In this document: positions 8,850 through 57,072 of the stretch, one piece after another | Numbering within the stretch: the first letter of the stretch is position 1 | How the letters are laid out: each line of letters opens with the position of its first letter | The notes under the pieces: model-generated | Told to the model about the DNA's origin: nothing | Database searches by the model: none | The model's input: the letters and a program-made list of their open reading frames with translations, nothing else | NCBI RefSeq assembly: GCF_001194135.2 | Contig: NC_068985.1 | Span: 107,540,459 to 107,604,458 of the forward strand | From: Octopus bimaculoides | Lineage: Eukaryota | DNA length: 64,000 bases | Direction of reading: 5' to 3' | Made by a program: the position numbers and the translations under genes

Positions 8850-9155
8850 AAGCATTAAGCGCAGAAATATATTTTCCAGCCAGTTAAACGTGTAGTGGCG
8901 CGAAATTATAGCCGCCATTGAGTAAGTACTATTCTGCGCATGCGCAGGGGACTTCACCACCGGAATCCTCTCGAGTTGTACATGCGTAGTAAAACTCGTA
9001 CTTAAGCAGTTAGTATCAATTTCTCGGTGAGTTGAGCTCAGACCTTCTACATGACAACACCTCGCTCCTCCACGAAGCACTTTTACACTGTTCTCTGGCA
9101 GGCATCAAGGAAGACCTTAACCTTCCATTACCAAACCACAACCCAATCAGCGGCT
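8850..9155. promoter_or_regulatory. CpG-rich housekeeping-type promoter candidate
   Basis: Visible CpG enrichment over about 8.0-9.1 kb against a CpG-poor background. Palindrome CTGCGCATGCGCAG at 8934-8947 (NRF1 consensus), GCCGCCATT at 8911-8919 (YY1-like), CCAATCA at about 9144. Confidence 0.6.
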
Positions 9156-9933
9156 GCTAAGCTGTATGACAGGAATTGTATAACCAAGTATCATCATAAA
9201 TAAACCTTTTTATTATGTTGTTAATTGTTCTGATGTCTCTTCATTCAAAATGCTGTAAAAGGCGATAGAGAGAGACTAAANNNNNNNNNNNNNNNNNNNN
9301 NNNNNNNNNNNNNNNNNNNNNNNNNNNNNNNNNNNNNNNNNNNNNNNNNNNNNNNNNNNNNNNNNNNNNNNNNNNNNNNNNNNNNNNNNNNNNNNNNNNN
9401 NNNNNNNNNNNNNNNNNNNNNNNNNNNNNNNNNNNNNNNNNNNNNNNNNNNNNNNNNNNNNNNNNNNNNNNNNNNNNNNNNNNNNNNNNNNNNNNNNNNN
9501 NNNNNNNNNNNNNNNNNNNNNNNNNNNNNNNNNNNNACACGCATTTAATTTCTCTGTCCTGTCCTGATTATATCTCACTTGAAAAAAAGAAAAAAAAAGA
9601 AAATACATACGAGAAGGTCGGTAATTTTTTTTTTTTTTCCTGCAAGCAGTACAAATAACTCACACTCACACAAACAGGAGAAAAAAACAAAAACAAACAC
9701 CATTGTTTTTTTGTTTTACGAAAATTTTTTTTCTCTCTCTTTCTCCTATGCACACATGATTCCACTATCTTTTCCAAGATTGATCTGGTTCGCGCTTATC
9801 ACCAGATTCCAGTTAATATAGAGGACATTCTCAAAACTGACATCACTACTCCTAATATCCATCCATCCATCTATCTATCTATCTATCTAGGTTTGCAAGA
9901 TTCTTTATGTGAATTCATGTGTTGAAGCATATT

Positions 9934-10937: not shown

Positions 10938-11449
10938 AAACGGGGGCGCCAGTTTTCATTTATGTTTTATGTAGTGTTTTTGGTACGGAAAGACTTTCAA
11001 ACTTCGTATACTTATCTATTTTGTGTTATAGAACAGAAAAATATTTTTGTATTCGAATTTATTTCATGTAAAAAATTGTATATCGTATTAATCCACTAAC
11101 CCTAACCCTAACTCGAGAATCCGAACTCTAAAATTGTTACACACATAGATACGCACAGCGTAATTTATTATATAAACAATATATGAGTATAAATTACGAT
11201 TAAACCGGATGAAATATGTCACAGGGAATAACATTTTTATGACCGCCCAGCAGTAACTCTATTGAGCTGAATAGACGTCAGTGATTGGTTGAAATTACAG
11301 AAATACGACAACTTTAACATGGAATAACTTGCGAATTCCTTTTTTTTTGTTAAGAAGACTAAGAGTAAAAGATGTTTTATATGACACATTCTACCAGTGT
11401 CCCAAGTTTCGTTAAGAAAATACTGGCACCCCCGTTTTAAAATAGATCC
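10938..11449. mobile_element. Merlin-like MITE copy 1 (left TIR truncated)
   Basis: Arms match 12896-13435 in reverse orientation. Right end CCCCCGTTTTAAAATAGATCC; left end begins at AAACGGGGGC. Confidence 0.75.
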
Positions 11450-12049
11450 AAGGCGTGCAGGAAACAGCAACCGAATCTTTCCAACCCACGAAACAAAATT
11501 CTGTTGCTGGGAAATTCAGAGTTTCCCAGTGACTCAACAGGTCACATGTAGTATAATAATACATTGGAAGTCAGATTGAATCTTGCTTGCTTGTAATGTT
11601 ACTCAGGCAAACTGTTGCATAATGGGAAAATACTATGAATTAAGTATATATATTAGCTGACGTACCCAGTAATTCCCGGTAAAGCAGGGCTTATCCCTTG
11701 GTTCCGTTCTCACAATTGTTTCGCTAATCCAATAACAACAATACAAAGTATGTATCCCTTAAGACGGTTTTTGTGCCCTTAAAGAGAATACCGAACTCTC
11801 TTACACAGGATCTTATTTTTAGGAATTCCCAATAAGTTATGAATACCCAAATTGTGAAGTCGGTTATGTGATTACATGAAATTAGTTACCCGGTAGCAAG
11901 AATTCAAATAAAGTAGCCCCGAAAAGGGCTTTAATGTGTTCCCAGAGTATATAGAACATAGGAGGAAATACTAATGAGGTATGTATACTAAAATTGTGAA
12001 GCATGTTACGTAATAACAGGTTAATCAGATATGAGATAATAATTCAAAG

Positions 12050-12619: not shown

Positions 12620-13550
12620 GAAAGAAAATGGAGATATGGCATTTAATAAAAAATTATTATCTGTAAAAATCAAACATAGTCCCTTACAGCTGTTTCATTT
12701 AAACCTAAAAGATTAAATAGCAATTATTAAAATCATTATATTAGGCAAAATCTCAGAGGAGTAGAAAAAATATACACCGTTGGGTTTTTTATGTGTTGTA
12801 TTTTAGAATCATCACAGTAGTCTGAACACATAAGAAACCTAATGGTATATATTCTTTGTACTCCTCTTATGAGATTTTGCCTAATATAATGATTTGGATC
12901 TTTTTTAAAACGGGGGCCACATTTTTCATTAACGAAACACTTTGAAACTTGGAACACTGGTAGAATGTGTCATATAAAACATCTTTTTTCTCTTAGTCTT
13001 CTTAAAAAAAAAAGAAATCCATAAGTTATTCCATGTGAAAGTTGTCGTATTTCTGTAATTTCAACCAATCACTGACGTCCATTCAGCCGACTACATAAAC
13101 AAACGATTCTGAAACAATTAACCCTAACCGTAGGGTTAGGGTTAAAGCAAATTTAAAATTAAAAAAGCAAATAAAACGAAGGTATGGAGATTAAATACGC
13201 TTTACATCGCTTAATCAGCCAAAGGAGTAAATATAAACAACTGAATACTTGTCAGTGATTGGTTGAAATTATCGAAATAAGACAATTATTTACATGAAAT
13301 AAATTCGAATACAAAAATATTTTTCTGTTCTATAACACAAAATAGATAAGTATACGAAGTTTGAAAGTCTTTCCGTACCAAAAACACTACGTAAAACATT
13401 AATGAAAAATGTGGCCCCCGTTTTAAAATAGATCCAATGATTTTAATAATTGCTATTTAATCTTTTAGGCTTAATTGAAACAGCTGTAAAGGACTATGTT
13501 TGACTTTTGCAGATAATAAATTTTTATTAAATGTTATGTCTCCATTTTCT
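12620..13550. repeat. foldback palindrome (host of MITE copy 2)
   Basis: 12621-12797 is the reverse complement of 12824-12895 joined to 13436-13550; loop about 26 nt. Confidence 0.85.
12896..13435. mobile_element. Merlin-like MITE copy 2
   Basis: About 37-bp TIR GGATCT(T/A)TTTTAAAACGGGGGCCACATTTTTCATTAA and an 8-bp TSD AATGATTT (12888-12895, 13436-13443). The superfamily is inferred only from GG-ended TIRs plus the 8-bp TSD. Confidence 0.8.
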
Positions 13551-16500
13551 TACTTTCTTTTGAATGATTATAAACCATGGATTATAAATAAACCTATTGT
13601 TTTATGAATATTATTATTCACAATAAATATTAGGTATTAAACCAGTAATTCATTGGATGATACCATCCCTTAATGAGCCTAATTTAACCTCTAATTAAAT
13701 ATATATATGTGTGTTATAGTGATAGTGTATATCATTAGATACACCATATAAAATATATATACACTATATAAGTATATTGGTATGCTATATGCATGTAATA
13801 TTTGTAGTATAATGTTGGTGGTGCAGTGTTAGCAGAATTTAGTGTTATGGTGGTATATGGCAGTGTCTTCACATTTTTATGAAGATAACAGGGAGGGGGA
13901 AGTAAAAGAGAAGAAAATAACAGAAAAATGACAAACAGAGAAAGTGTTTAATATTGGAAATATGACTTTATTATTTTTTTTTCTGTGATTGTTGTCAGAA
14001 TTATGGAAACTGATGATGATACTGACAGTTGTGGCCACTGTTAACAGCAGCAAGTACTTCCAGAGTAAGCATGCTGCATACAGTGACCCTTTTAGTTAAC
14101 AGAACTACTACCCCAGGTAGGTGTCTATTTTATTGTACAACACACACACATACACACATATGGAGAGAAAGAGAGAGACACACAAAGACAGGTGTATATA
14201 CATGCCCACATAGAGAGCTTGAGTGGTATGCACAGAGACAGGTGGACAAATGCTTGTAGAAAGAGACAAAGACAGAAAGATAGAAAAATAGATAAACACA
14301 TGCATACACACACATACATATATACAGAGAGACTAGCAGAAAGATGAACAAGAACACAGAAAAAAGATGTTAAATTACTGCTGAACTGCTATTGACCAAA
14401 GTATGACTAAGAGTTTTATTTTTATATTATATAGCAGTTAGTTGACATATATAGTGTTAGGACAAGAAACAAAGGAGGACATTCATTACTGCATATAGAA
14501 ATCTGAAGACAAAAATATATAAATGCGACATATGATTACTAAAAATGCTTTTTTACTCTCTTTTTGGATGGATTTCNNNNNNNNNNNNNNNNNNNNNNNN
14601 NNNNNNNNNNNNNNNNNNNNNNNNNNNNNNNNNNNNNNNNNNNNNNNNNNNNNNNNNNNNNNNNNNNNNNCAGTGTCCTACTATATGGCTCTTGGCACTG
14701 GCTACTTAAAGAAAAAAAGTGAATACCGAGTTCCACAAGGCACAGGTCATAGAAGCCATAACTTTAAATTAATTTAGATGCATGTGTCATTGTTGAAAAA
14801 AAAAAAATACCTCAATCTAATTCCAAAATTCAACGAAGATCAGCTCTCTCACTGAAAGGTAATATTTGTGCCTGGAGAATTATATAAAATAACATCCACA
14901 CTCACAAATATATATGTATGAATTTTTCTGCAGTGAATGCTGGAGGCGATTTTGATAGTATTACAGAATCTGGTTAATTGCCTAGCATAATAATATCAGC
15001 CAATATTCTGATACATGTATGTTTTATAAAACTTAAAATACTAGTAGCATTAGCTCTAACTGGACACAAGCTGGGGCTTGATTAACCCCAGCTGGGTTGC
15101 CTGGGGAAGGGCACCTGATGTTGAAATAAACTTGAAACACCGAATGACCCCCAAGAAACATTACTAATAATGTGTCCAGGTGCATCACAGGAAAAATTAC
15201 ACACACACACACAACTTACACATACACACAATTAAACCAGAAAACTGCTTTTGACTGACTTATTGGGTATGAATTATAAATTCACTGAAGGATATTATCC
15301 TACCCAGTTGTGGTAGCAGGCATTAAGTACTACATTAAAGAGATGACACAGAACCACATCTGAGACAAACTATTGAATGATATAACCATATCTCCATTTA
15401 TCAATTTAAGTTCATGACTCACTAGAAAGTGAATGAAAATGACATACACTATATTGTGAGCAGCGTCTATGAATCTTTAAAGCTAATTCCTTAATTCAAG
15501 CCAACACATACACACACACACACACACACAATTTTTGTAAGGAAAAGGTTGACTGTGACAGTTGTCAAAGAGTTTGATGGCTGTTTGTAAACCAAAATTT
15601 CAAAGTCAGTCAACTTCTTCCTTGTAAAACTTAGTAAAAAGTATGGAGTGATCCTTTAATGTTAAATTGTTTTTATATATAATTAAACAAACAAATATAT
15701 ATAATTATCTTTACTCTCTTAACTATACTACTTATTGGACTTCGTACCACTCATATTATATACACACACATCTACACCTTGCATAGTTTTGATATTGGAA
15801 GTCTCCCTTATTATAAGCTTATAGAATTGTCTAGCTCTAGGTCTAACTCTGGAATGGAGGGATCATTGAATAGAAAGGAGTCAGTGAGAGAACTGTTCCT
15901 CAAAGAAGTATTCATTGGAAATTCATTTAATGTAACTTAACAACAGTGAAATCTGTCCTGCACATAAGAGACACCACTGCTGCTCAAAAAGCAACTCAGT
16001 TAAACACACTGTCAAAAAAAAAAATAGTTTAAACATGAAGCAGATAGTTATTTGCCAGTAGTTAAGAATAGGTTACATATCAGGAGACAAAAGTATTTGG
16101 ATAATAATAATCTGGAGTCAGTGTTGATCACGTGATTAGAGATAGTGTGAATCTGAAGAAAGAAAAGCAAGCCACAAATGTGAAGTTAATGAATATGAGA
16201 GCAGCGTGCATGAGTGAATTCAACAGAAGAAGTATGAAGCATTAGCCTAGTTATATTTCCTCTCCTTATGGTGGGGCTAGAACAGCATTAATTCCTGCCA
16301 AAACTGGTGTATGTGTTGGTGTGTGTGTGTGTCCATTCTTGGAATGTGTTCTGATCTGATGTAAATTATTCTATTTTGAGATCCCTGCCACATCATTAAG
16401 CTGACAATAGGAGATAGTCAACGCAGGTAGAATCAACAACATGGACTGTGTGAATTTTCACCATGTGAATTGTTGGGTAGAAGTAGTCCAAGACTTCTCC

Positions 16501-17440: not shown

Positions 17441-19801
17441 CAGTTACAACTTTTGGACTGTTTTAGCACTACATGTTTGGAAGATGAGAATTTGTTTTAT
17501 TTTAATATGAGATTGTCATAATGTTGGAAAATATGAAAATTTGAAGAAAAACAGCTGCAAGGTATTGTCTTTTTTCTTTCTTTTTTTTTTTTTTTGCATG
17601 TATAAGACATTCAGATGTTATTGGTGAAAGTCAGTTGAGTTTTATAACAAATTGTTATAATTAAGACCCTATCATATTGCTATTATGCTCTAACTGAACC
17701 AAAGAACAAAAGTAATACTCGGCTAAATCCATAATGTCACTTTTGAAATTTTATTTCTCTAAATGCTTTCATAATAAAATATATGCAGGGAGAATGTACA
17801 AAGGGGAGAGAAAAAGTAACCATTTGCTATTGACCATTTGTTATTTACATGGCATCTAAAGATGTTTTGTTCCATCTCAAATTGCTATCTTGCATCTCCC
17901 AGCTACTGTCTCTTTTGCTCTTTGCAATGAGACAAAGTAATTTAGTAATAAAGAGAAACTTGCTAAATATTCAGATTCCAAAAATAATGATTTAACAACT
18001 TCTGGTTTTCACTTAAAAAAAATTCTAGTAGAAAACAACTACCAGTTTGTAAGAGTATGAAATATGACTTCTTACTGTGAGGTGCACAAAGTGCCACATT
18101 TTAAAAGAGGAGGTAAGTGGGGTTGAGATGTGGTGTCTCTCATCAGGGGATTAATGGAGAAAGTGAGTTAACATGGCACCAAAAGGAAATCAAAACTGGG
18201 CCTCGCACTTCACTTAGCATGAGATTTTTTTTCTACTATTGTATGAAAAATATATAGAAAAGGTGAAAGATGTGTTTGTTTGTTTATATATATGAATATA
18301 TATATTATATATATCATACAGACAACACATTATATATTATATGTAGTTGAATGATAAAAGCAGGGTGAGGTGTCAGGAATGATTGTACTAAACAAACAGA
18401 CCAATCATTGGTTTGCATCACACTGCAGCTGGAAAAGGCAATAGGAGATTGTTGATATAACACACACAAGAGAAGCTTCTAGTTTATCTGCATTGATTGA
18501 CGAAGTCTGACTACATAGTTGTGAATTAGATGCAGACACCAATTTCCATATAATGGAATAGAGCAGAAGGCAAGTTCTAGTTTTATCTAATATATATATA
18601 GATATGTATATTCTTGTGTTTGCTACCAGTTTTTATGCATACAAATTTTGTTAAAAATTACTGGCCTGGTAAAGAATTTCACTGGTTAAAAGTATATCTA
18701 TATATATGTATATTTACATACTAAGTTTGCAGAAAAAAATATATAGCTTTTAAGTTTTATTCATTGTCTCAAACTTTAAAAAAATTTTTCTTTCTTTTTC
18801 AGTTAATCATGTATTTTTCATACGTGTACAAATTTTCCTTTTGAGGCACCAAAGGCATGCAAGCTTCACAGGGACATGAGAAAGAATGGAGACAGTGACA
18901 TGGTGAATGAAGTGAAACAGTTAGTTGACTACAGGCAGATATCTGTAAGTACTATAAGTGAAGCCAGACACACATCATGCAGATTAACAATTTACAGGAA
19001 ATGAATCTCAATAGAACAGATATGAATCTAGAAAAATAGTCAATGAATTGACAGACACAGAAACCCTAAATTATATGGAGAGAATCAAAATAAATAATAC
19101 AAATAGACAGTTTGGCATGTTGTTGAAAAATTCCCAAACTGGATATTGGGGTGGCGGCATAGGTAACTATTAGTAATTTAGTCCACTAACAAGTAGGTAG
19201 TCTAATAATAGATATACTGTCATATTGCTACTATCTATTCTAAACTAAATAAAGGAAGAAAACGGAGATATAACATCAACAACAGATGAGGTGGGATGGG
19301 ATTTTAAAGTAAAACATAAAAAAAGGGGGGAAAAATTACAAGAAAATTAAGTCACATGAAATTGTTGGAACATTTTCAGATTTTTCAGTGGGAAGGGGGA
19401 TGGGAGTGCAACTGAGGTAACCAGCTGATCCCATAAAGGTCCTTGTTTAGTCCAGGGAAAATGATGGCAGTGATGCTTGGAAGTTGCTGCAAAATACAGG
19501 CCTGGATTGTTTGCAGATTTGAAGCAACTGGTGCACAAAATGAACAACAAAAGCACCAACATCAGTATCTGTGATGTAGACTGCCGAGTATGAAGAGAAT
19601 CCAGTTCAGGACCAACTGGTAACATGACTGGTAGGGTTCCTTGTTTGGGATCAACTGGCACTGAGAACTCTTCAACTTGTCCAAAGAAATTGGCAGCAGT
19701 TAGGAGTAGAAAGAAGCTTGTGTTCATGGTCATCCAATAATAATGTTAATAATGATAATAATAATCATATCAGTAATGAAAATAATATCAATAACAATTG
19801 A

Positions 19802-19921
19802 TCATTCCAGTTTTGTATTTGCAGCAACTTTAGCGTGAATTTTGGCATGAACTTTCAAATATTCTGGACGATTTTCCAGTTTTTCGTTGACATGTTTTAA
19901 TTTTTCATCTTTTTCTTCTTC
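19802..19921 (-). CDS. FAM107B: FAM107-family protein, last coding exon
   Basis: Polypyrimidine tract plus AG at 19923-19922, phase 0. Reads EEEKDEKLKHVNEKLENRPEYLKVHAKIHAKVAANTKLE-TGA (cf. FAM107 EN.PEF.KV). The three exons total 426 nt = 141 aa plus stop. Confidence 0.9.
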   Translation of the reverse strand, partial: EEEKDEKLKHVNEKLENRPEYLKVHAKIHAKVAANTKLE

Positions 19922-21271
19922 CTAAAAAGATAAAAAAAAAAGAAGAATATTTATTAAGAATGATGAGATGGTAGAGTTATTGTATTGACCAGATGGTATT
20001 GAGGCAAATCTTTTTTACAGCTTGATGCTTTTCATATTGCCAACAAATAAGTTAAAACTTCCTCTTGGTCAAACACGTTTTCATGAAAAACTGGAAATGA
20101 GTAATGCCCCTTATATGATGATGACTGCTTGTTCACAATTATAATGCAATGTCAAAACTAGGACGAGTATACACACACATACATGACAGGCTCCTTTCAG
20201 TTTCCATTTCCCAAATCCACTCACAAAGTTTTCGCTGGTCAAAGCCTATAATAGAAGACACCAGCCCATGGTGCCAGCAAGTGTCTTCTGGGGCCGTGTG
20301 ATAGAAACTGACAAAAGCTCATCACGTGTGTGTGTGTGTGCATGCATGTTTGTGTTTATTTGCCATCAAATTGTAGCCATTTGAGCAGGGGTGGTGATAA
20401 TGTTTAGCTCATGGTTTTGCCATGTGTGTAGATCAGAGGAATAACAATACTTTACTTGAAAAACAGCTATGGGTTGGCAACAAGCAGAGCATCTACTAGC
20501 ATAGAAAAGGTGCATGTAAAAACAATAATGATGATCTGTCAAATACTGAATCATTAAAAAAAAAAATAATTACTAGTACCCCATTCCTAATTTTTGTGAC
20601 CCTACGTTATATAAGAACCCATTATTATTGTTGTGAATGAAGGAAACACGAGTAAACAACTTCACTTTCAGAGGAAGAGGTGTATGACACAGTTGTCTCC
20701 CTTAGACACCAATCTAGCCAACATTACTAAATATTCCAAGCCAGAGATATATTATTTAAGAGAAAAACAGGGAAGGTGTTTTGACAGTCATGCTTTTCCA
20801 AACATCATTACGTTACCAAAAATGAAATTTAATCTGAATACAATTTTACTTCACTGCAGCGGAGTAACTGACAAGCCTAACTGCTGCCCCAAATACTTTA
20901 AACTTCCAATACTTTTGAACTATGATGCACGTCAGAGCCTAACTTCCTGATCAATAACAGATACCAGTTCTAAGTTACATTTTAATATCTGTTAGTCTTC
21001 CCCAAGCCTTGCTTTAACTATAGGTGAACAAGAGTTTTGTTTATGTTTGAGGATAATGTTGCTAGTGAGAGGTTGCAACCGTTTCCCCATTATGATTGAA
21101 CTGACGTAAATGAAAACAGAAAGCATCTTTTTTCAAATGTTTTTAACAGCTGAAGGATGCAGATGAAACTCAGTGTTGACCAAGTGGACTGAGTCTTGAA
21201 GAATGAAAAACCAATTTGGTCTTGTACAATGTTGTATACTCTACTGGGATCACATATCCAGAACAAGTGCT

Positions 21272-26213: not shown

Positions 26214-26763
26214 GAAGATATTTTCTGTGTAACAATAACAGCAATGACATTTTAGGCAACGAGATAACATTTATAAAGAAGAAAAACAAAAAGATATCTC
26301 TATAACAGTTTGAAAGTAGAAATTGTGGAATAATATAACCACAAAGATAAATAAAGTTTTGGTGTAATTTTTATTATTTATCTAACCCATGCCAGCATGG
26401 AAGACAGACATTAAATGATGATGATGATTCAATGTCTTTAGTTCCACTTTTCCATGCTTGCATGGGTCACACAATAACTTTGATGAAGTGTATTTTTCTA
26501 TGATTGAATGCTCTTCCCGTTGCTAACCCTCATCTGTTTCTTTAAGTCTATCTAGCTAACAACAAATACCTGGACATGCTTTTACAGAGAAATCTTAACA
26601 AGTGACACCGTTTGTATGAATGGTGACTTCTTGTTTACAATCAGGTGCAGGCATGATTGAGTGGTTAAGAAGTTTGCATACCCAACCACATGACATTTTG
26701 GGCACAGGTTGGAAACAAACCACATTGCTTATATGACAGTGATGCTCATTTGTAATTATTGTA

Positions 26764-27310
26764 CAGGGTGTCCACAAAGTCTGGGTACATGGAGTAAATA
26801 AAATCATAACATAAACAGTTAAATATAAGAAATAATAATTTCTTAAAGTATGTGTTAATCTCCATGTGGGTACATGGAGTAAATAAAATTGTGACATAAA
26901 CAATTAAATATAAGAAATAATAATTTCTTAAAGTATGTGTTAATCTCCATGTGGGTACATGGAGTAAATAAAATCGTGACATAAACATTTAAATATAAAA
27001 AATTATAATTTCTTAAAGAATGTGTTAATCCCCATGTGGGTACATGGAGTAAATAAAATCATAACATAAACAATTAAATATAAGAAATAATAATTTCTTA
27101 AAGTATGTGTTGATCTCCATGTGGGTACATGGAGAAAATAAAATCGTGACAAACATTTAAATATAAAAAATAATTTTTTAAAGAATGTGTTAATCCCCAT
27201 GTGGGTACATGGAGTAAATAAAATCATAACATAAACATTTAAATATAAGAAATTATAATTTCTTAAAGTATGTGTTAATCCCCATGTACCCAGACTTTGT
27301 GGACACCCTG
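26764..27310. mobile_element. Tc1/mariner-type MITE with an internal 6x85-bp tandem array
   Basis: Perfect 29-bp TIR CAGGGTGTCCACAAAGTCTGGGTACATGG with TA on both flanks. Units start at 26783, 26868, 26953, 27038, 27123 and 27203. Confidence 0.92.
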
Positions 27311-41314: not shown

Positions 41315-41864
41315 TTGTTGTTGTTGTTGGCACTCCGTCGCTTACGATGTCGAGGGTTCCAGTTGATCCGATCAATGGAACAGCCTGCTCGTGAAATTAA
41401 CATGCAAGTAGCTGAGCAATCCACAGACACGTGTACCCTTAACGTAGTTCTCGGGGATATTCAGCGTGACACAGTGTGACAAGGCTGGCTCTTTTGAATT
41501 ACAGGCACAACAGAAACAGGAAGTAAGAGTGAGAGAAAGTTGTGGTGAAAGAGTACAGCAGGGTTCGCCNNNNNNNNNNTCGTGAAATTAACATGCAAGT
41601 AGCTGAGCAATCCACAGACACGTGTACCCTTAACGTAGTTCTCGGGGATATTCAGCGTGACACAGTGTGACAAGGCTGGCTCTTTTGAATTACAGGCACA
41701 ACAGAAACAGGAAGTAAGAGTGAGAGAAAGTTGTGGTGAAAGAGTACAGCAGGGTTCGCCACCATCCCTTGCCGGAGCCTCGTGGAGCTTTAGGTGTTTT
41801 CGCTCAATAAACACTCACAACACCTGGTCTGAGAATCAAAACCACTGGGCCATTGCACCTCCAC
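41315..41864 (-). mobile_element. tRNA-derived SINE family C with (CAA)n tail, spanning a 10-N gap
   Basis: Reverse complement of 57507-57882; 181 bp appear twice across the gap. Confidence 0.85.
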
Positions 41865-53906: not shown

Positions 53907-54397
53907 NNNNNNNNNNNNNNNNNNNNNNNNNNNNNNNNNNNNNNNNNNNNNNNNNNNNNNNNNNNNNNNNNNNNNNNNNNNNNNNNNNNNNNNNNNNNNN
54001 NNNNNNNNNNNNNNNNNNNNNNNNNNNNNNNNNNNNNNNNNNNNNNNNNNNNNNNNNNNNNNNNNNNNNNNNNNNNNNNNNNNNNNNNNNNNNNNNNNNN
54101 NNNNNNNNNNNNNNNNNNNNNNNNNNNNNNNNNNNNNNNNNNNNNNNNNNNNNNNNNNNNNNNNNNNNNNNNNNNNNNNNNNNNNNNNNNNNNNNNNNNN
54201 NNNNNNNNNNNNNNNNNNNNNNNNNNNNNNNNNNNNNNNNNNNNNNNNNNNNNNNNNNNNNNNNNNNNNNNNNNNNNNNNNNNNNNNNNNNNNNNNNNNN
54301 NNNNNNNNNNNNNNNNNNNNNNNNNNNNNNNNNNNNNNNNNNNNNNNNNNNNNNNNNNNNNNNNNNNNNNNNNNNNNNNNNNNNNNNNNNNNNNNNN

Positions 54398-55509: not shown

Positions 55510-55917
55510 TCTTTTATTTGTTTCAGTCTTTTGACCACTGTCATGCTGGAGGACCACCTTTAGTCAAACAAATCGACCCCAGGACTTATTCTTTGTAAGC
55601 CTAGTACTTATTCTCTTATGTCGCANNNNNNNNNNNNNNNNNNNNNNNNNNNNNNNNNNNNNNNNNNNNNNNNNNNNNNNNNNNNNNNNNNNNNNNNNNN
55701 NNNNNNNNNNNNNNNNNNNNNNNNNNNNNNNNNNNNNNNNNNNNNNNNNNNNNNNNNNNNNNNNNNNNNNNNNNNNNNNNNNNNNNNNNNNNNNNNNNNN
55801 NNNNNNNNNNNNNNNNNNNNNNNNNNNNNNNNNNNNNNNNNNNNNNNNNNNNNNNNNNNNNNNNNNNNNNNNNNNNNNNNNNNNNNNNNNNNNNNNNNNN
55901 NNNNNNNNNNNNNNNNN

Positions 55918-56591: not shown

Positions 56592-57072
56592 ATAGAGAAA
56601 GAGAGAGGGGGGAGAAGAGAGGAAGAGAGGGAGTGGGAGAGAATAGAGGGAGGGTGAGGAAATAGAGGGAGGGGGAGAGAGAAGAGAGGGAGGGTGAGAG
56701 AATAGAGGGAGGGTGAGAGAGGAGGGAGAGGGAGAAGAGAGAGGAGGGAGATATAAGAGAGAAGAGGGAGGGGAGAGAGGAGAGAGAGGGGGAGAGAGAA
56801 GAGGGAGGGGGAGAGAGAAGAGNNNNNNNNNNNNNNNNNNNNNNNNNNNNNNNNNNNNNNNNNNNNNNNAGAAGAGAGGGAGGGTGAGAGAATAGAGGGA
56901 GGGTGAGAGAAGAGAGGGAGGGTGAGAGAATAGAGGGAGGGTGAGAGAGGAGGGAGAGGGAGAAGAGAGAGGAGGGAGATATAAGAGAGAAGAGGGAGGG
57001 GAGAGAGGAGAGAGAGGGGGAGAGAGAAGAGGGAGGGGGAGAGAGAAGAGGGAGGGGGAGAGAGAAGAGAGA
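56592..57072 (+). repeat. polypurine (GA/GGA-rich) tract with higher-order repetition
   Basis: Almost exclusively A/G on the + strand; the block GAGAGGAGGGAGAGGGAGAAGAGAGAGGAGGGAGATATAAGAGA occurs on both sides of the gap at 56823-56869. Confidence 0.85.

What the first reader, a model, noticed from the sequence alone, without database searches (positions are those of the whole stretch)
19481..19830. Long-range mRNA duplex over the last FAM107 codons and stop, with A-C mismatches (candidate ADAR recoding or stop-editing element)
Seen: on the mRNA strand, the CDS end AAGUUGCUGCAAA-UACA-AAA-CUGGA-A-UG-A (19830-19802) is complementary to a 3' UTR segment about 300 nt downstream (19510-19481). 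The helix is 13 perfect bp, a 1-nt bulge, 4 bp, a 3x3 loop, 5 bp, A-A, then 2 bp on the stop codon. The 3x3 loop places the Lys139 codon AAA opposite C, C and G. Neither arm is a repeat. A rough hand estimate puts the chance of the 13-mer alone near 1e-3 for this search space, before the extra pairs, but the search was post hoc. Known: ADARs prefer A opposite C in imperfect duplexes, and coleoid cephalopods recode heavily. Inference: editing could give K139E/R/G, or UGA-to-UGG (Trp) readthrough.
Basis: partly seen in the sequence, partly recalled or inferred. Interest (0 to 1): 0.7.

Follow-up and report, generated by a model that had tools for sequence, protein, structure and literature searches.

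The report
Conserved CDS–3′UTR helix in octopus FAM107B
The last ten codons of an octopus FAM107B-like gene base-pair with a stretch of the same gene's 3′ untranslated region about 300 nt downstream, and a distantly related octopod keeps this helix, so it is a credible but untested RNA-editing target of a kind already known in cephalopods.

Summary
The window is Octopus bimaculoides, gene LOC106871063 (FAM107B-like, DUF1151), on the minus strand. The mRNA segment 19834-19802 (last codons plus UGA) pairs with 19510-19475: 27 bp, with a 13-bp perfect core, at -34.7 kcal/mol.

- **Stability:** pair probabilities are about 0.9-1.0 in a 1.5-kb spliced-mRNA model. None of 1000 shuffled UTRs reaches this energy.
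- **Post hoc caveat:** the 13-mer alone is not significant across the whole window (8 such repeats seen, about 1 expected).
- **Conservation:** both arms are kept in O. vulgaris, an unnamed Octopus species and Argonauta hians. The UTR arm is a conservation peak (28/30 identical against 77% for its block). Argonauta's substitutions preserve the helix (-37.2 kcal/mol; under 1% of random substitution sets do as well). These 19 bp are the only confidently predicted pairs shared by all four species.
- **Limits:** there is no compensatory double change. A more distant cephalopod contig has no such duplex.

The best reading is a lineage-conserved dsRNA that serves as an ADAR substrate. The likeliest targets are T138 (19816; G in the other three species) and K139 (A·C mismatches). 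Stop-codon editing is the least likely outcome. I could reach no RNA data, so editing itself is untested.

The parts
19802..19921 (-). Last coding exon of the FAM107B-like gene LOC106871063 (codons 103-141 of the 141-aa model, plus the stop)
   Evidence: A splice acceptor ttttag precedes 19921. The reading frame is continuous with exons 26213-26062 and 24539-24386. Pfam DUF1151 E=5e-24. 100% identity to XP_014772815.
19802..19834 (-). 5' (CDS) arm of the long-range helix: codons A132(part)-E141 plus UGA
   Evidence: pair probabilities 0.9-1.0. Its best partner anywhere on the sense strand of the window is the UTR arm.
19475..19510 (-). 3' (UTR) arm of the helix, 292-327 nt after the stop. It would act as an editing-site complementary sequence if the ADAR reading is right.
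   Evidence: It is 28/30 identical to Argonauta hians, against 77% for the surrounding conserved block (P=0.02).
19811..19813 (-). Lys139 codon AAA in the 3x3 internal loop, opposite C19499, C19500 and G19501
   Evidence: In Argonauta C19499 is U, so the loop shrinks to 2x2. The A19812.C19500 mismatch is kept in all four species.
19816..19816 (-). First base of Thr138 (ACA). It is A only in O. bimaculoides and G (Ala) in O. vulgaris, the L003 species and Argonauta. It pairs with U19496 (A-U here, G.U in the others).
   Evidence: Its 5' neighbour is U.
19802..19804 (-). UGA stop codon. U and G pair with A19508 and C19509. A19802 lies opposite A19510 at the helix end.
   Evidence: (pair probability about 0.48).
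19518..19529 (-). Local competitor: AGUUGCUUCAAA can pair with the UTR arm (19493-19482) to form a small hairpin.
   Evidence: -13.5 kcal/mol; -10.6 in Argonauta. Its probability is about 0 in the partition function of every species. RNAalifold wrongly preferred it.
19420..19750 (-). Conserved proximal 3'UTR block that holds the UTR arm
   Evidence: Identity between O. bimaculoides and Argonauta is 0.67-0.93 in 30-nt windows, against 0.37-0.50 in the intron and 0.3-0.6 in the distal UTR.
18756..18761 (-). First canonical poly(A) signal AATAAA after the stop. It sets the 3'UTR at about 1.06 kb.
   Evidence: The signal and its flanks are conserved in all four octopods.

Best explanation
The last 33 nt of the coding sequence and a 36-nt stretch of the same mRNA's 3'UTR, about 300 nt downstream, form a stable, imperfect 27-bp double helix. 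This helix has been kept since the common ancestor of Octopus and Argonauta. In coleoid cephalopods an imperfect helix of this length is the kind of structure that ADAR deaminases bind. The most likely function is therefore that the UTR arm acts as an editing-site complementary sequence, and one or more adenosines in codons 133-141 are converted to inosine. The likeliest targets are A19816 (Thr138 to Ala, which restores the ancestral residue) and A19813/A19812 (Lys139 to Glu, Arg or Gly, at A.C mismatches). Editing of the stop codon is unlikely. Shown: the sequence complementarity, its predicted thermodynamic dominance, its conservation, and the structure-preserving pattern of substitutions. 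Inferred: that the 3'UTR includes the arm, that the helix forms in vivo, and that ADAR acts on it.
For: Structure: -34.7 kcal/mol. It is in the MFE and centroid. Pair probabilities are 0.9-1.0 in the spliced-mRNA model and about 1 in each of four species folded separately. No shuffled UTR out of 1000 matches it. The two arms are each other's best partner within the transcript. Conservation: the duplex is -35.9 in O. vulgaris, -32.8 in the L003 species and -37.2 in Argonauta. The UTR arm is a conservation peak. Only 0.66% of random substitution sets of the same size and type reach Argonauta's energy, and 0.72% when only the non-coding arm is mutated. The 19 bp of this helix are the only pairs with P>0.5 shared by all four species across 530 nt. 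All three variable pairs are A-U/G.U exchanges. These are compatible only with the mRNA-sense strand, which argues for an RNA-level rather than a DNA-level or antisense feature. ADAR-related hints: A.C mismatches sit at K139, and A19816 has a 5' U. All three O. bimaculoides-specific changes in this exon are nonsynonymous G-to-A (19902, 19882, 19816), against 1 of 10 in the UTR (Fisher P=0.014). That is the pattern predicted by the harm-permitting/restorative-editing model (PMC6881472), and it matches the report that guanines tend to be replaced by edited adenines in the Octopus pair, with stronger RNA structure around such sites (PMC7703385). In squid, editing is enriched in CDS and 3'UTR (PMC9068888).
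Against: No RNA-DNA comparison was available, so not one edited site is shown. There is no pair with a compensatory change on both sides, and three of the four species are close relatives, so covariation support is nil. The evidence is conservation plus one-sided compatible changes. The CDS arm is conserved anyway by coding constraint, and the whole proximal UTR block is conserved, possibly for other reasons. RNAalifold's consensus did not select the helix. A more distant cephalopod contig (L001) has the same C-terminal peptide but no equivalent duplex (-15.1 kcal/mol, the background median). Translating ribosomes would unwind the helix. Duplexes of this energy are not rare genome-wide. The tissue in which the gene is expressed is unknown.
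Confidence: 0.5

Rival explanations
1. The helix is real and selected, but it works without editing. It could be a binding platform for a double-stranded-RNA-binding protein (Staufen-type transport or decay), or a translation-sensitive switch. It would be closed in untranslated or transported mRNA and opened by the ribosome as it reads the last ten codons.
For: The structural and conservation evidence is the same as for the best explanation. None of it is specific to ADAR. The A19813.C mismatch that would favour editing is not conserved in Argonauta. The helix is if anything tighter there (-37.2), as expected if stability rather than a particular mismatch is what is selected.
Against: One arm is coding. 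A bound protein would be stripped in every round of translation, unlike classical Staufen sites, which lie wholly in the 3'UTR downstream of the stop. The helix lies upstream of and over the stop, not downstream of it, so it cannot act as a readthrough or termination roadblock of the known kind. This reading does not account for the excess of G-to-A substitutions in the exon.
Confidence: 0.17
2. The complementarity is incidental. The CDS arm is conserved because it codes for protein, and the UTR arm because it lies in a conserved regulatory block (microRNA or protein-binding sites). The match arose by chance or from an old small inverted duplication and has no function of its own, although ADAR may still edit it at a low, neutral level.
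For: The window holds 8 perfect inverted repeats of 13 bp or more at this spacing, with about 1 expected by chance. 0.64% of all 30-nt windows do as well. The UTR arm finds an equally stable chance partner 7 kb beyond the poly(A) site. There is no double compensatory change. The duplex is absent from the distant cephalopod L001. The finding was made post hoc.
Against: The UTR arm is more conserved than the already conserved block around it (P=0.02). Substitutions in the non-coding arm alone are structure-preserving at P about 0.007. The local competing hairpin decays in Argonauta while the long-range helix does not. It is the only confidently predicted structure shared by all four species.
Confidence: 0.28
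3. The element exists to edit the stop codon (UGA to UGG, Trp). That would give readthrough into a 24-residue isoleucine-rich tail ending at the next in-frame UGA.
For: U and G of the stop are paired at the end of the helix. The readthrough frame is open in all four octopods up to a conserved UGA, and the length differences between species are multiples of three.
Against: A19802 has a 5' G, lies opposite A and is the terminal position of the helix, which is the worst ADAR context in the arm (with established ADAR neighbour and mismatch preferences). The pairs on the stop have a probability of only about 0.48. The open frame runs through an ATT/ATC trinucleotide-repeat-like stretch, where stop-free frames and 3-nt indels are expected without selection. 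The tail's sequence is poorly conserved.
Confidence: 0.03

Closest known systems
Site-selective ADAR substrates made of an exonic editing site and an editing-site complementary sequence (ECS), such as the GRIA2 R/G and Q/R sites, and substrates formed wholly in mature mRNA, such as GABRA3 I/M, NEIL1 and AZIN1 (from established knowledge)
   Same: An imperfect helix of about 25-30 bp with bulges and an internal loop. Candidate adenosines sit at A.C mismatches or next to a 5' U. The complementary arm is non-coding and evolutionarily conserved.
   Different: Here the complementary arm lies in the 3'UTR about 300 nt downstream, not in an adjacent intron or exon, so the substrate persists in mature mRNA. 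No editing has been shown. Conservation is limited to octopods.
Mass recoding in coleoid cephalopods (Liscovitch-Brauer et al. 2017; Albertin et al. 2022, PMC9068888; Jiang and Zhang 2019, PMC6881472; Moldovan et al. 2020, PMC7703385)
   Same: Same organism group. The sequence around the coding site is constrained. There is an A/G difference between sister species at a structured site. G-to-A substitutions occur where editing would restore the ancestral residue.
   Different: Those studies define sites from RNA-DNA mismatches. This locus is defined only by structure and conservation, and I could not find it in any site list that I could read.
Stop-codon editing by ADAR at the amber/W site of hepatitis delta virus (named only, from established knowledge)
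   Same: A stop codon embedded in a helix is converted to a Trp codon, which extends the protein.
   Different: There the edited A is the middle base of UAG, at an A.C mismatch inside a long helix. Here it would be the last base of UGA, with a 5' G, opposite A, at the helix terminus.
Staufen-binding sites formed by long-range pairing in 3'UTRs, such as ARF1 (from established knowledge)
   Same: A long-range intramolecular helix of about 19 bp or more that involves the 3'UTR.
   Different: Classical sites lie entirely downstream of the stop codon. Here one arm is coding sequence and would be unwound by translation.

Membership tests
ADAR editing site plus ECS duplex | An imperfect intramolecular dsRNA of roughly 15-20 bp or more that contains the target adenosine | tested here: met
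   27 bp (13-bp perfect core), -34.7 kcal/mol, pair probabilities 0.9-1.0. This is prediction only, not probing.
ADAR editing site plus ECS duplex | Both arms lie on the same transcript | tested here: inconclusive
   No AATAAA or ATTAAA occurs before 18761, and that signal is conserved in four species. No transcript or 3'-end data were reachable (the contigs found carry intron sequence and look genomic).
ADAR editing site plus ECS duplex | A-to-G differences between RNA and genomic DNA at the site | not testable with these tools
   The primary editome papers are not held. The gene is absent from the supplements that are held.
ADAR editing site plus ECS duplex | The non-coding complementary arm is conserved and pairing is maintained across species | tested here: met
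   The UTR arm is 28/30 identical to Argonauta, against 77% for its block. Substitutions are structure-preserving at P about 0.007. There are no double compensatory changes.
ADAR editing site plus ECS duplex | The target adenosine is in a favourable context (5' U or A rather than G; an A.C mismatch or A-U pair) | tested here: met
   Met for A19816 (5' U) and for A19813/A19812 (A.C). Not met for the stop-codon A19802 (5' G, A.A, helix end).
Structure that stimulates programmed stop-codon readthrough | A stable structure that begins a few nucleotides downstream of the stop codon | tested here: not met
   The stop codon is the 3' end of the 5' arm. The sequence just downstream is an unstructured AU-rich repeat.
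Staufen-type 3'UTR binding site | The helix lies wholly in the 3'UTR, out of reach of the terminating ribosome | tested here: not met
   One arm is codons 132-141 plus the stop.
Transposon terminal inverted repeats / MITE | The arms or the enclosed segment are repeated elsewhere, and the element is not fixed at an orthologous position in distant species | tested here: not met
   Both arms are unique in the window, even with 1 mismatch allowed. Only the AT-rich microsatellite part of the block has other hits. The element sits at the orthologous position in Argonauta. No Rfam family matches.

The most novel reading that the evidence does not exclude
A duplex between the coding exon and the 3'UTR, conserved from Octopus to Argonauta, acts as a dedicated editing element in mature mRNA for the C-terminus of a FAM107B-like protein. 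In O. bimaculoides it restores the ancestral Ala138 (and possibly other G-to-A changes in the exon) at a high level. That would make this a clean, testable single-locus example of harm-permitting or restorative editing with an identified complementary sequence.
Probability: 0.12. Interest if true: 0.6.

Novelty: new member of a known kind. Interest (0 to 1): 0.4.

Why it matters
Tens of thousands of recoding sites are known in cephalopods, but the RNA structures that specify them are rarely pinned down. Here both arms of a candidate substrate are defined to the nucleotide. They sit in mature mRNA, are conserved across a deep split within octopods, and carry a natural A/G difference between species (19816). 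That makes a compact system of about 450 nt for testing three things: how an ECS in a 3'UTR directs editing, whether editing restores an ancestral residue after a G-to-A substitution, and how translation competes with dsRNA formation. If no editing is found, the locus is still a conserved CDS-UTR helix whose function would need another explanation.

Tried and rejected
- **RNAalifold.** The consensus on four species chose the small local hairpin instead of the long-range helix. I rejected that because separate partition functions for every species give the long-range helix P about 1 and the local hairpin P about 0.
- **Transcript evidence.** An exact look-up of the 128-aa ORF in the UTR found nothing for O. 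bimaculoides. The related Logan contigs L003 and L004 carry intron sequence and sequence past the poly(A) signal. They are identical to each other, so they look genomic and give no editing information.
- **Loci that could not be fetched.** The O. sinensis locus and the long-isoform Argonauta locus exceed 100 kb. I reached Argonauta through a spurious ORF annotated in its UTR.
- **More species.** A third homology search with a profile of the UTR-ORF translations found none.
- **Literature.** PMC5499236 and PMC10445230 are not held. There is no FAM107, LOC or XP identifier in the supplements of PMC8382921 or PMC9989829. No paper links FAM107 with cephalopods.
- **Source organisms.** The accession search for L001 and L003 hit only an unrelated run number.
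- **Is the 128-aa UTR ORF (19733-19347) coding?** No. Argonauta has a 7-nt deletion inside it, and protein identity is only 59% over 60% of the length.
- **Known RNA family or repeat?** Neither.
- **Failed run.** The first window-wide inverted-repeat count was swamped by N gaps and microsatellites. I redid it with filters.

Full report
**What the locus is.** The window is Octopus bimaculoides. tblastn with a vertebrate FAM107 sequence, followed by direct reading, gives three minus-strand exons: 26213-26062, 24539-24386 and 19921-19802. They encode a 141-aa product with a DUF1151/FAM107 domain (Pfam E=5e-24). The product is 100% identical to the C-terminal 141 residues of XP_014772815 (LOC106871063; other isoforms are named FAM107B). 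The first AATAAA or ATTAAA after the stop is at 18761. That signal and its flanks are conserved in four octopods. The 3'UTR is therefore most likely about 1.06 kb long and includes 19510-19475. This point is inferred, because I could reach no transcript data.

**The observation.** The two arms are exactly as described. The layout is 13 perfect bp, one bulged U, 4 bp, a 3x3 loop (AAA of K139 opposite C, C and G), 5 bp, an A.A mismatch, and 2 bp on the U and G of the stop. Three further pairs extend it (GCU 19834-19832 with AGC 19477-19475). That makes 27 bp and -34.7 kcal/mol.
- The helix is in both the MFE and the centroid of the 622-nt fold (z=-2.97).
- Its pair probabilities are 0.9-1.0 in a 1503-nt model of the spliced mRNA.
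- A small local hairpin can compete for the UTR arm (19529-19518 with 19493-19482). It is worth only -13.5 kcal/mol and has probability about 0.

**Chance.** For the specific question of whether the CDS end pairs with its own UTR, 0 of 1000 dinucleotide shuffles reach the observed energy (z=-7.1). The next-best sense-strand partner of the CDS arm in the whole window is -27.2. The post hoc caveat is nevertheless real:
- 0.64% of all 30-nt windows do as well within 600 nt.
- The window has 8 non-low-complexity perfect inverted repeats of 13 bp or more at this spacing, where about 1.15 are expected.
- The UTR arm has an equally stable chance partner at 11487-11445, beyond the poly(A) site.

On sequence alone the duplex is unusual but not compelling.

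**Comparative evidence.** Through cluster members and exact look-ups I obtained four further loci:
- the orthologous last exon and 3' region of O. vulgaris (L002);
- an unnamed Octopus species about 94% identical (L003 and L004, which look like genomic Logan contigs);
- Argonauta hians (L005);
- an unidentified, more distant cephalopod contig (L001).

O. vulgaris is 97% identical throughout, which is too close to be informative. Argonauta is informative. The intron does not align (0.37-0.50 identity in 30-nt windows) and the distal UTR is at 0.3-0.6. A proximal UTR block (19750-19420) is conserved at 0.67-0.93, and the UTR arm is a peak within it at 0.93. That is 28/30 identical against 77% for the rest of the block (P=0.02).

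The duplex is kept in every octopod: -35.9, -32.8 and -37.2 kcal/mol, with probability about 1 in each species folded alone. Across the 530-nt region, the only pairs with P>0.5 shared by all four species are 19 bp of this helix.

The differences inside the arms are as follows.
- **A19816 to G** in all three other species. The pair changes from A-U to G.U.
- **A19814 to G** in the L003 species. The pair becomes G.U.
- **A19830 to G** in Argonauta. The pair becomes G.U.
- **C19499 to U** in Argonauta. This creates a new A-U pair in the loop.
- **U19492 to C** in Argonauta. This is absorbed by a shift of the bulge.
- **U19506 to G** in the L003 species. This breaks one terminal pair.

Random substitutions of the same number and type reach Argonauta's stability in only 0.66% of trials. 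The figure is 0.72% when only the non-coding arm is mutated. The G.U pairs would be C.A mismatches on the other strand, so the constraint belongs to the mRNA-sense RNA.

There are also limits. No pair shows a change on both sides, and there are only two effectively independent lineages. The distant contig L001 keeps the peptide ...AANVNKLE* but has an unrelated 3' region and no duplex (-15.1 kcal/mol, the background median). The helix therefore appears to be specific to octopods.

**What it most likely does.** A conserved, imperfect helix of about 27 bp in a coleoid mRNA is the expected shape of an ADAR substrate. In squid, editing is enriched in CDS and 3'UTR (PMC9068888).

A19816 (T138 to A) has the preferred 5' U. 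A19813 and A19812 (K139 to E or R) are at A.C mismatches, although the first of these is an A-U pair in Argonauta. A19830 (K133 to R) is the very change that is fixed in Argonauta. The stop-codon A19802 has a 5' G, is opposite A and lies at the helix end, so UGA-to-UGG editing is the least likely outcome.

One further observation fits editing. All three O. bimaculoides-specific substitutions in this exon are nonsynonymous G-to-A (R109K at 19902, E116K at 19882, A138T at 19816). Only 1 of 10 lineage-specific changes in the UTR is G-to-A (Fisher P=0.014). This is the signature predicted by the harm-permitting/restorative-editing model (PMC6881472). It also agrees with the finding that guanines tend to be replaced by edited adenines in the Octopus pair, with stronger structure around such sites (PMC7703385). 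The numbers are small, so this is a hint and not a demonstration.

**Rivals.** The same structural evidence would fit a non-editing role, such as dsRBP binding or a translation-sensitive switch. However, one arm is coding and would be unwound in every round of translation, and the helix is not placed like known readthrough stimulators or Staufen sites. An incidental match between two separately conserved sequences cannot be excluded while there is no covariation. It is disfavoured by the conservation peak at the arm and by the structure-preserving substitutions in the non-coding arm.

**Verdict.** The structure is very probably real at the sequence level, and selection to keep it is plausible. 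The ADAR reading is the best available explanation but is untested, and stop-codon editing is improbable. It would be one more member of a well-known kind in an animal group where such sites number in the tens of thousands, so interest is moderate.

Noticed in passing
window 19902, 19882, 19816 (minus strand): All three amino-acid differences between O. bimaculoides and the other three octopods in the 141-aa region lie in the last exon. All are derived, nonsynonymous G-to-A changes on the mRNA strand (R109K, E116K, A138T). Only 1 of 10 lineage-specific changes in the 3'UTR is G-to-A.
   Followed up: partly
window 19873-19898 with 20072-20097: A second inverted repeat (13 perfect bp; 26 nt at 77%) pairs the same exon (codons about 111-119, including the G-to-A site 19882) with the upstream intron, in a classical exon-intron ECS layout. 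It is present in O. vulgaris, but the intron does not align and the duplex is absent in Argonauta.
   Followed up: partly
window 19347-19733 (minus strand); L005 8001-8375: A 128-aa ORF lies inside the 3'UTR. Its Argonauta counterpart is annotated as hypothetical protein Ahia01_000151000. A 7-nt deletion and low protein identity show that it is a by-product of nucleotide conservation, so that annotation is probably spurious.
   Followed up: yes
window 19729-19801 (minus strand): The frame after the UGA stays open for 24 codons (an Ile-rich stretch, SIVIDIIFITDMIIIIIINIIIG) up to a conserved UGA. It is open in all four octopods, and the length differences are 6 and 21 nt. The stretch is an ATT/ATC repeat, so this may mean nothing.
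   Followed up: partly
window 19646-19659 with 19421-19434: Another 14-bp long-range pairing inside the conserved UTR block (GCCAGUUGAUCCCA with UGGGAUCAGCUGGU) pairs in all four species, with two one-sided changes, in the RNAalifold consensus. It does not reach P>0.5 in every single-species fold.
   Followed up: partly
window 11445-11487 (minus strand): This segment can pair with the UTR arm as stably (-34.6 kcal/mol) as the CDS arm does. It lies about 7 kb beyond the poly(A) signal, so it is presumably irrelevant, but it is a useful yardstick for chance.
   Followed up: yes
window 12730-13416 and 26762-27300: Two clusters of perfect inverted repeats of 13 bp or more, possibly terminal inverted repeats of transposons. 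The second cluster lies just upstream of the first coding exon of the short isoform.
   Followed up: no
window 9281-9536, 14577-14670, 41570-41579, 53907-54397, 55626-55917, 56823-56869: Runs of N (assembly gaps). They distort naive repeat counts.
   Followed up: yes
L001 4202-4522, about 9140-9328, 13591-13725: An unidentified ENA contig (ERZ21867824) carries a FAM107B-like gene with the same three-exon layout and similar intron sizes. Protein identity is 55-67%, the stop is TAA and the 3'UTR is unrelated. It probably comes from another cephalopod lineage, but the taxon could not be determined.
   Followed up: partly
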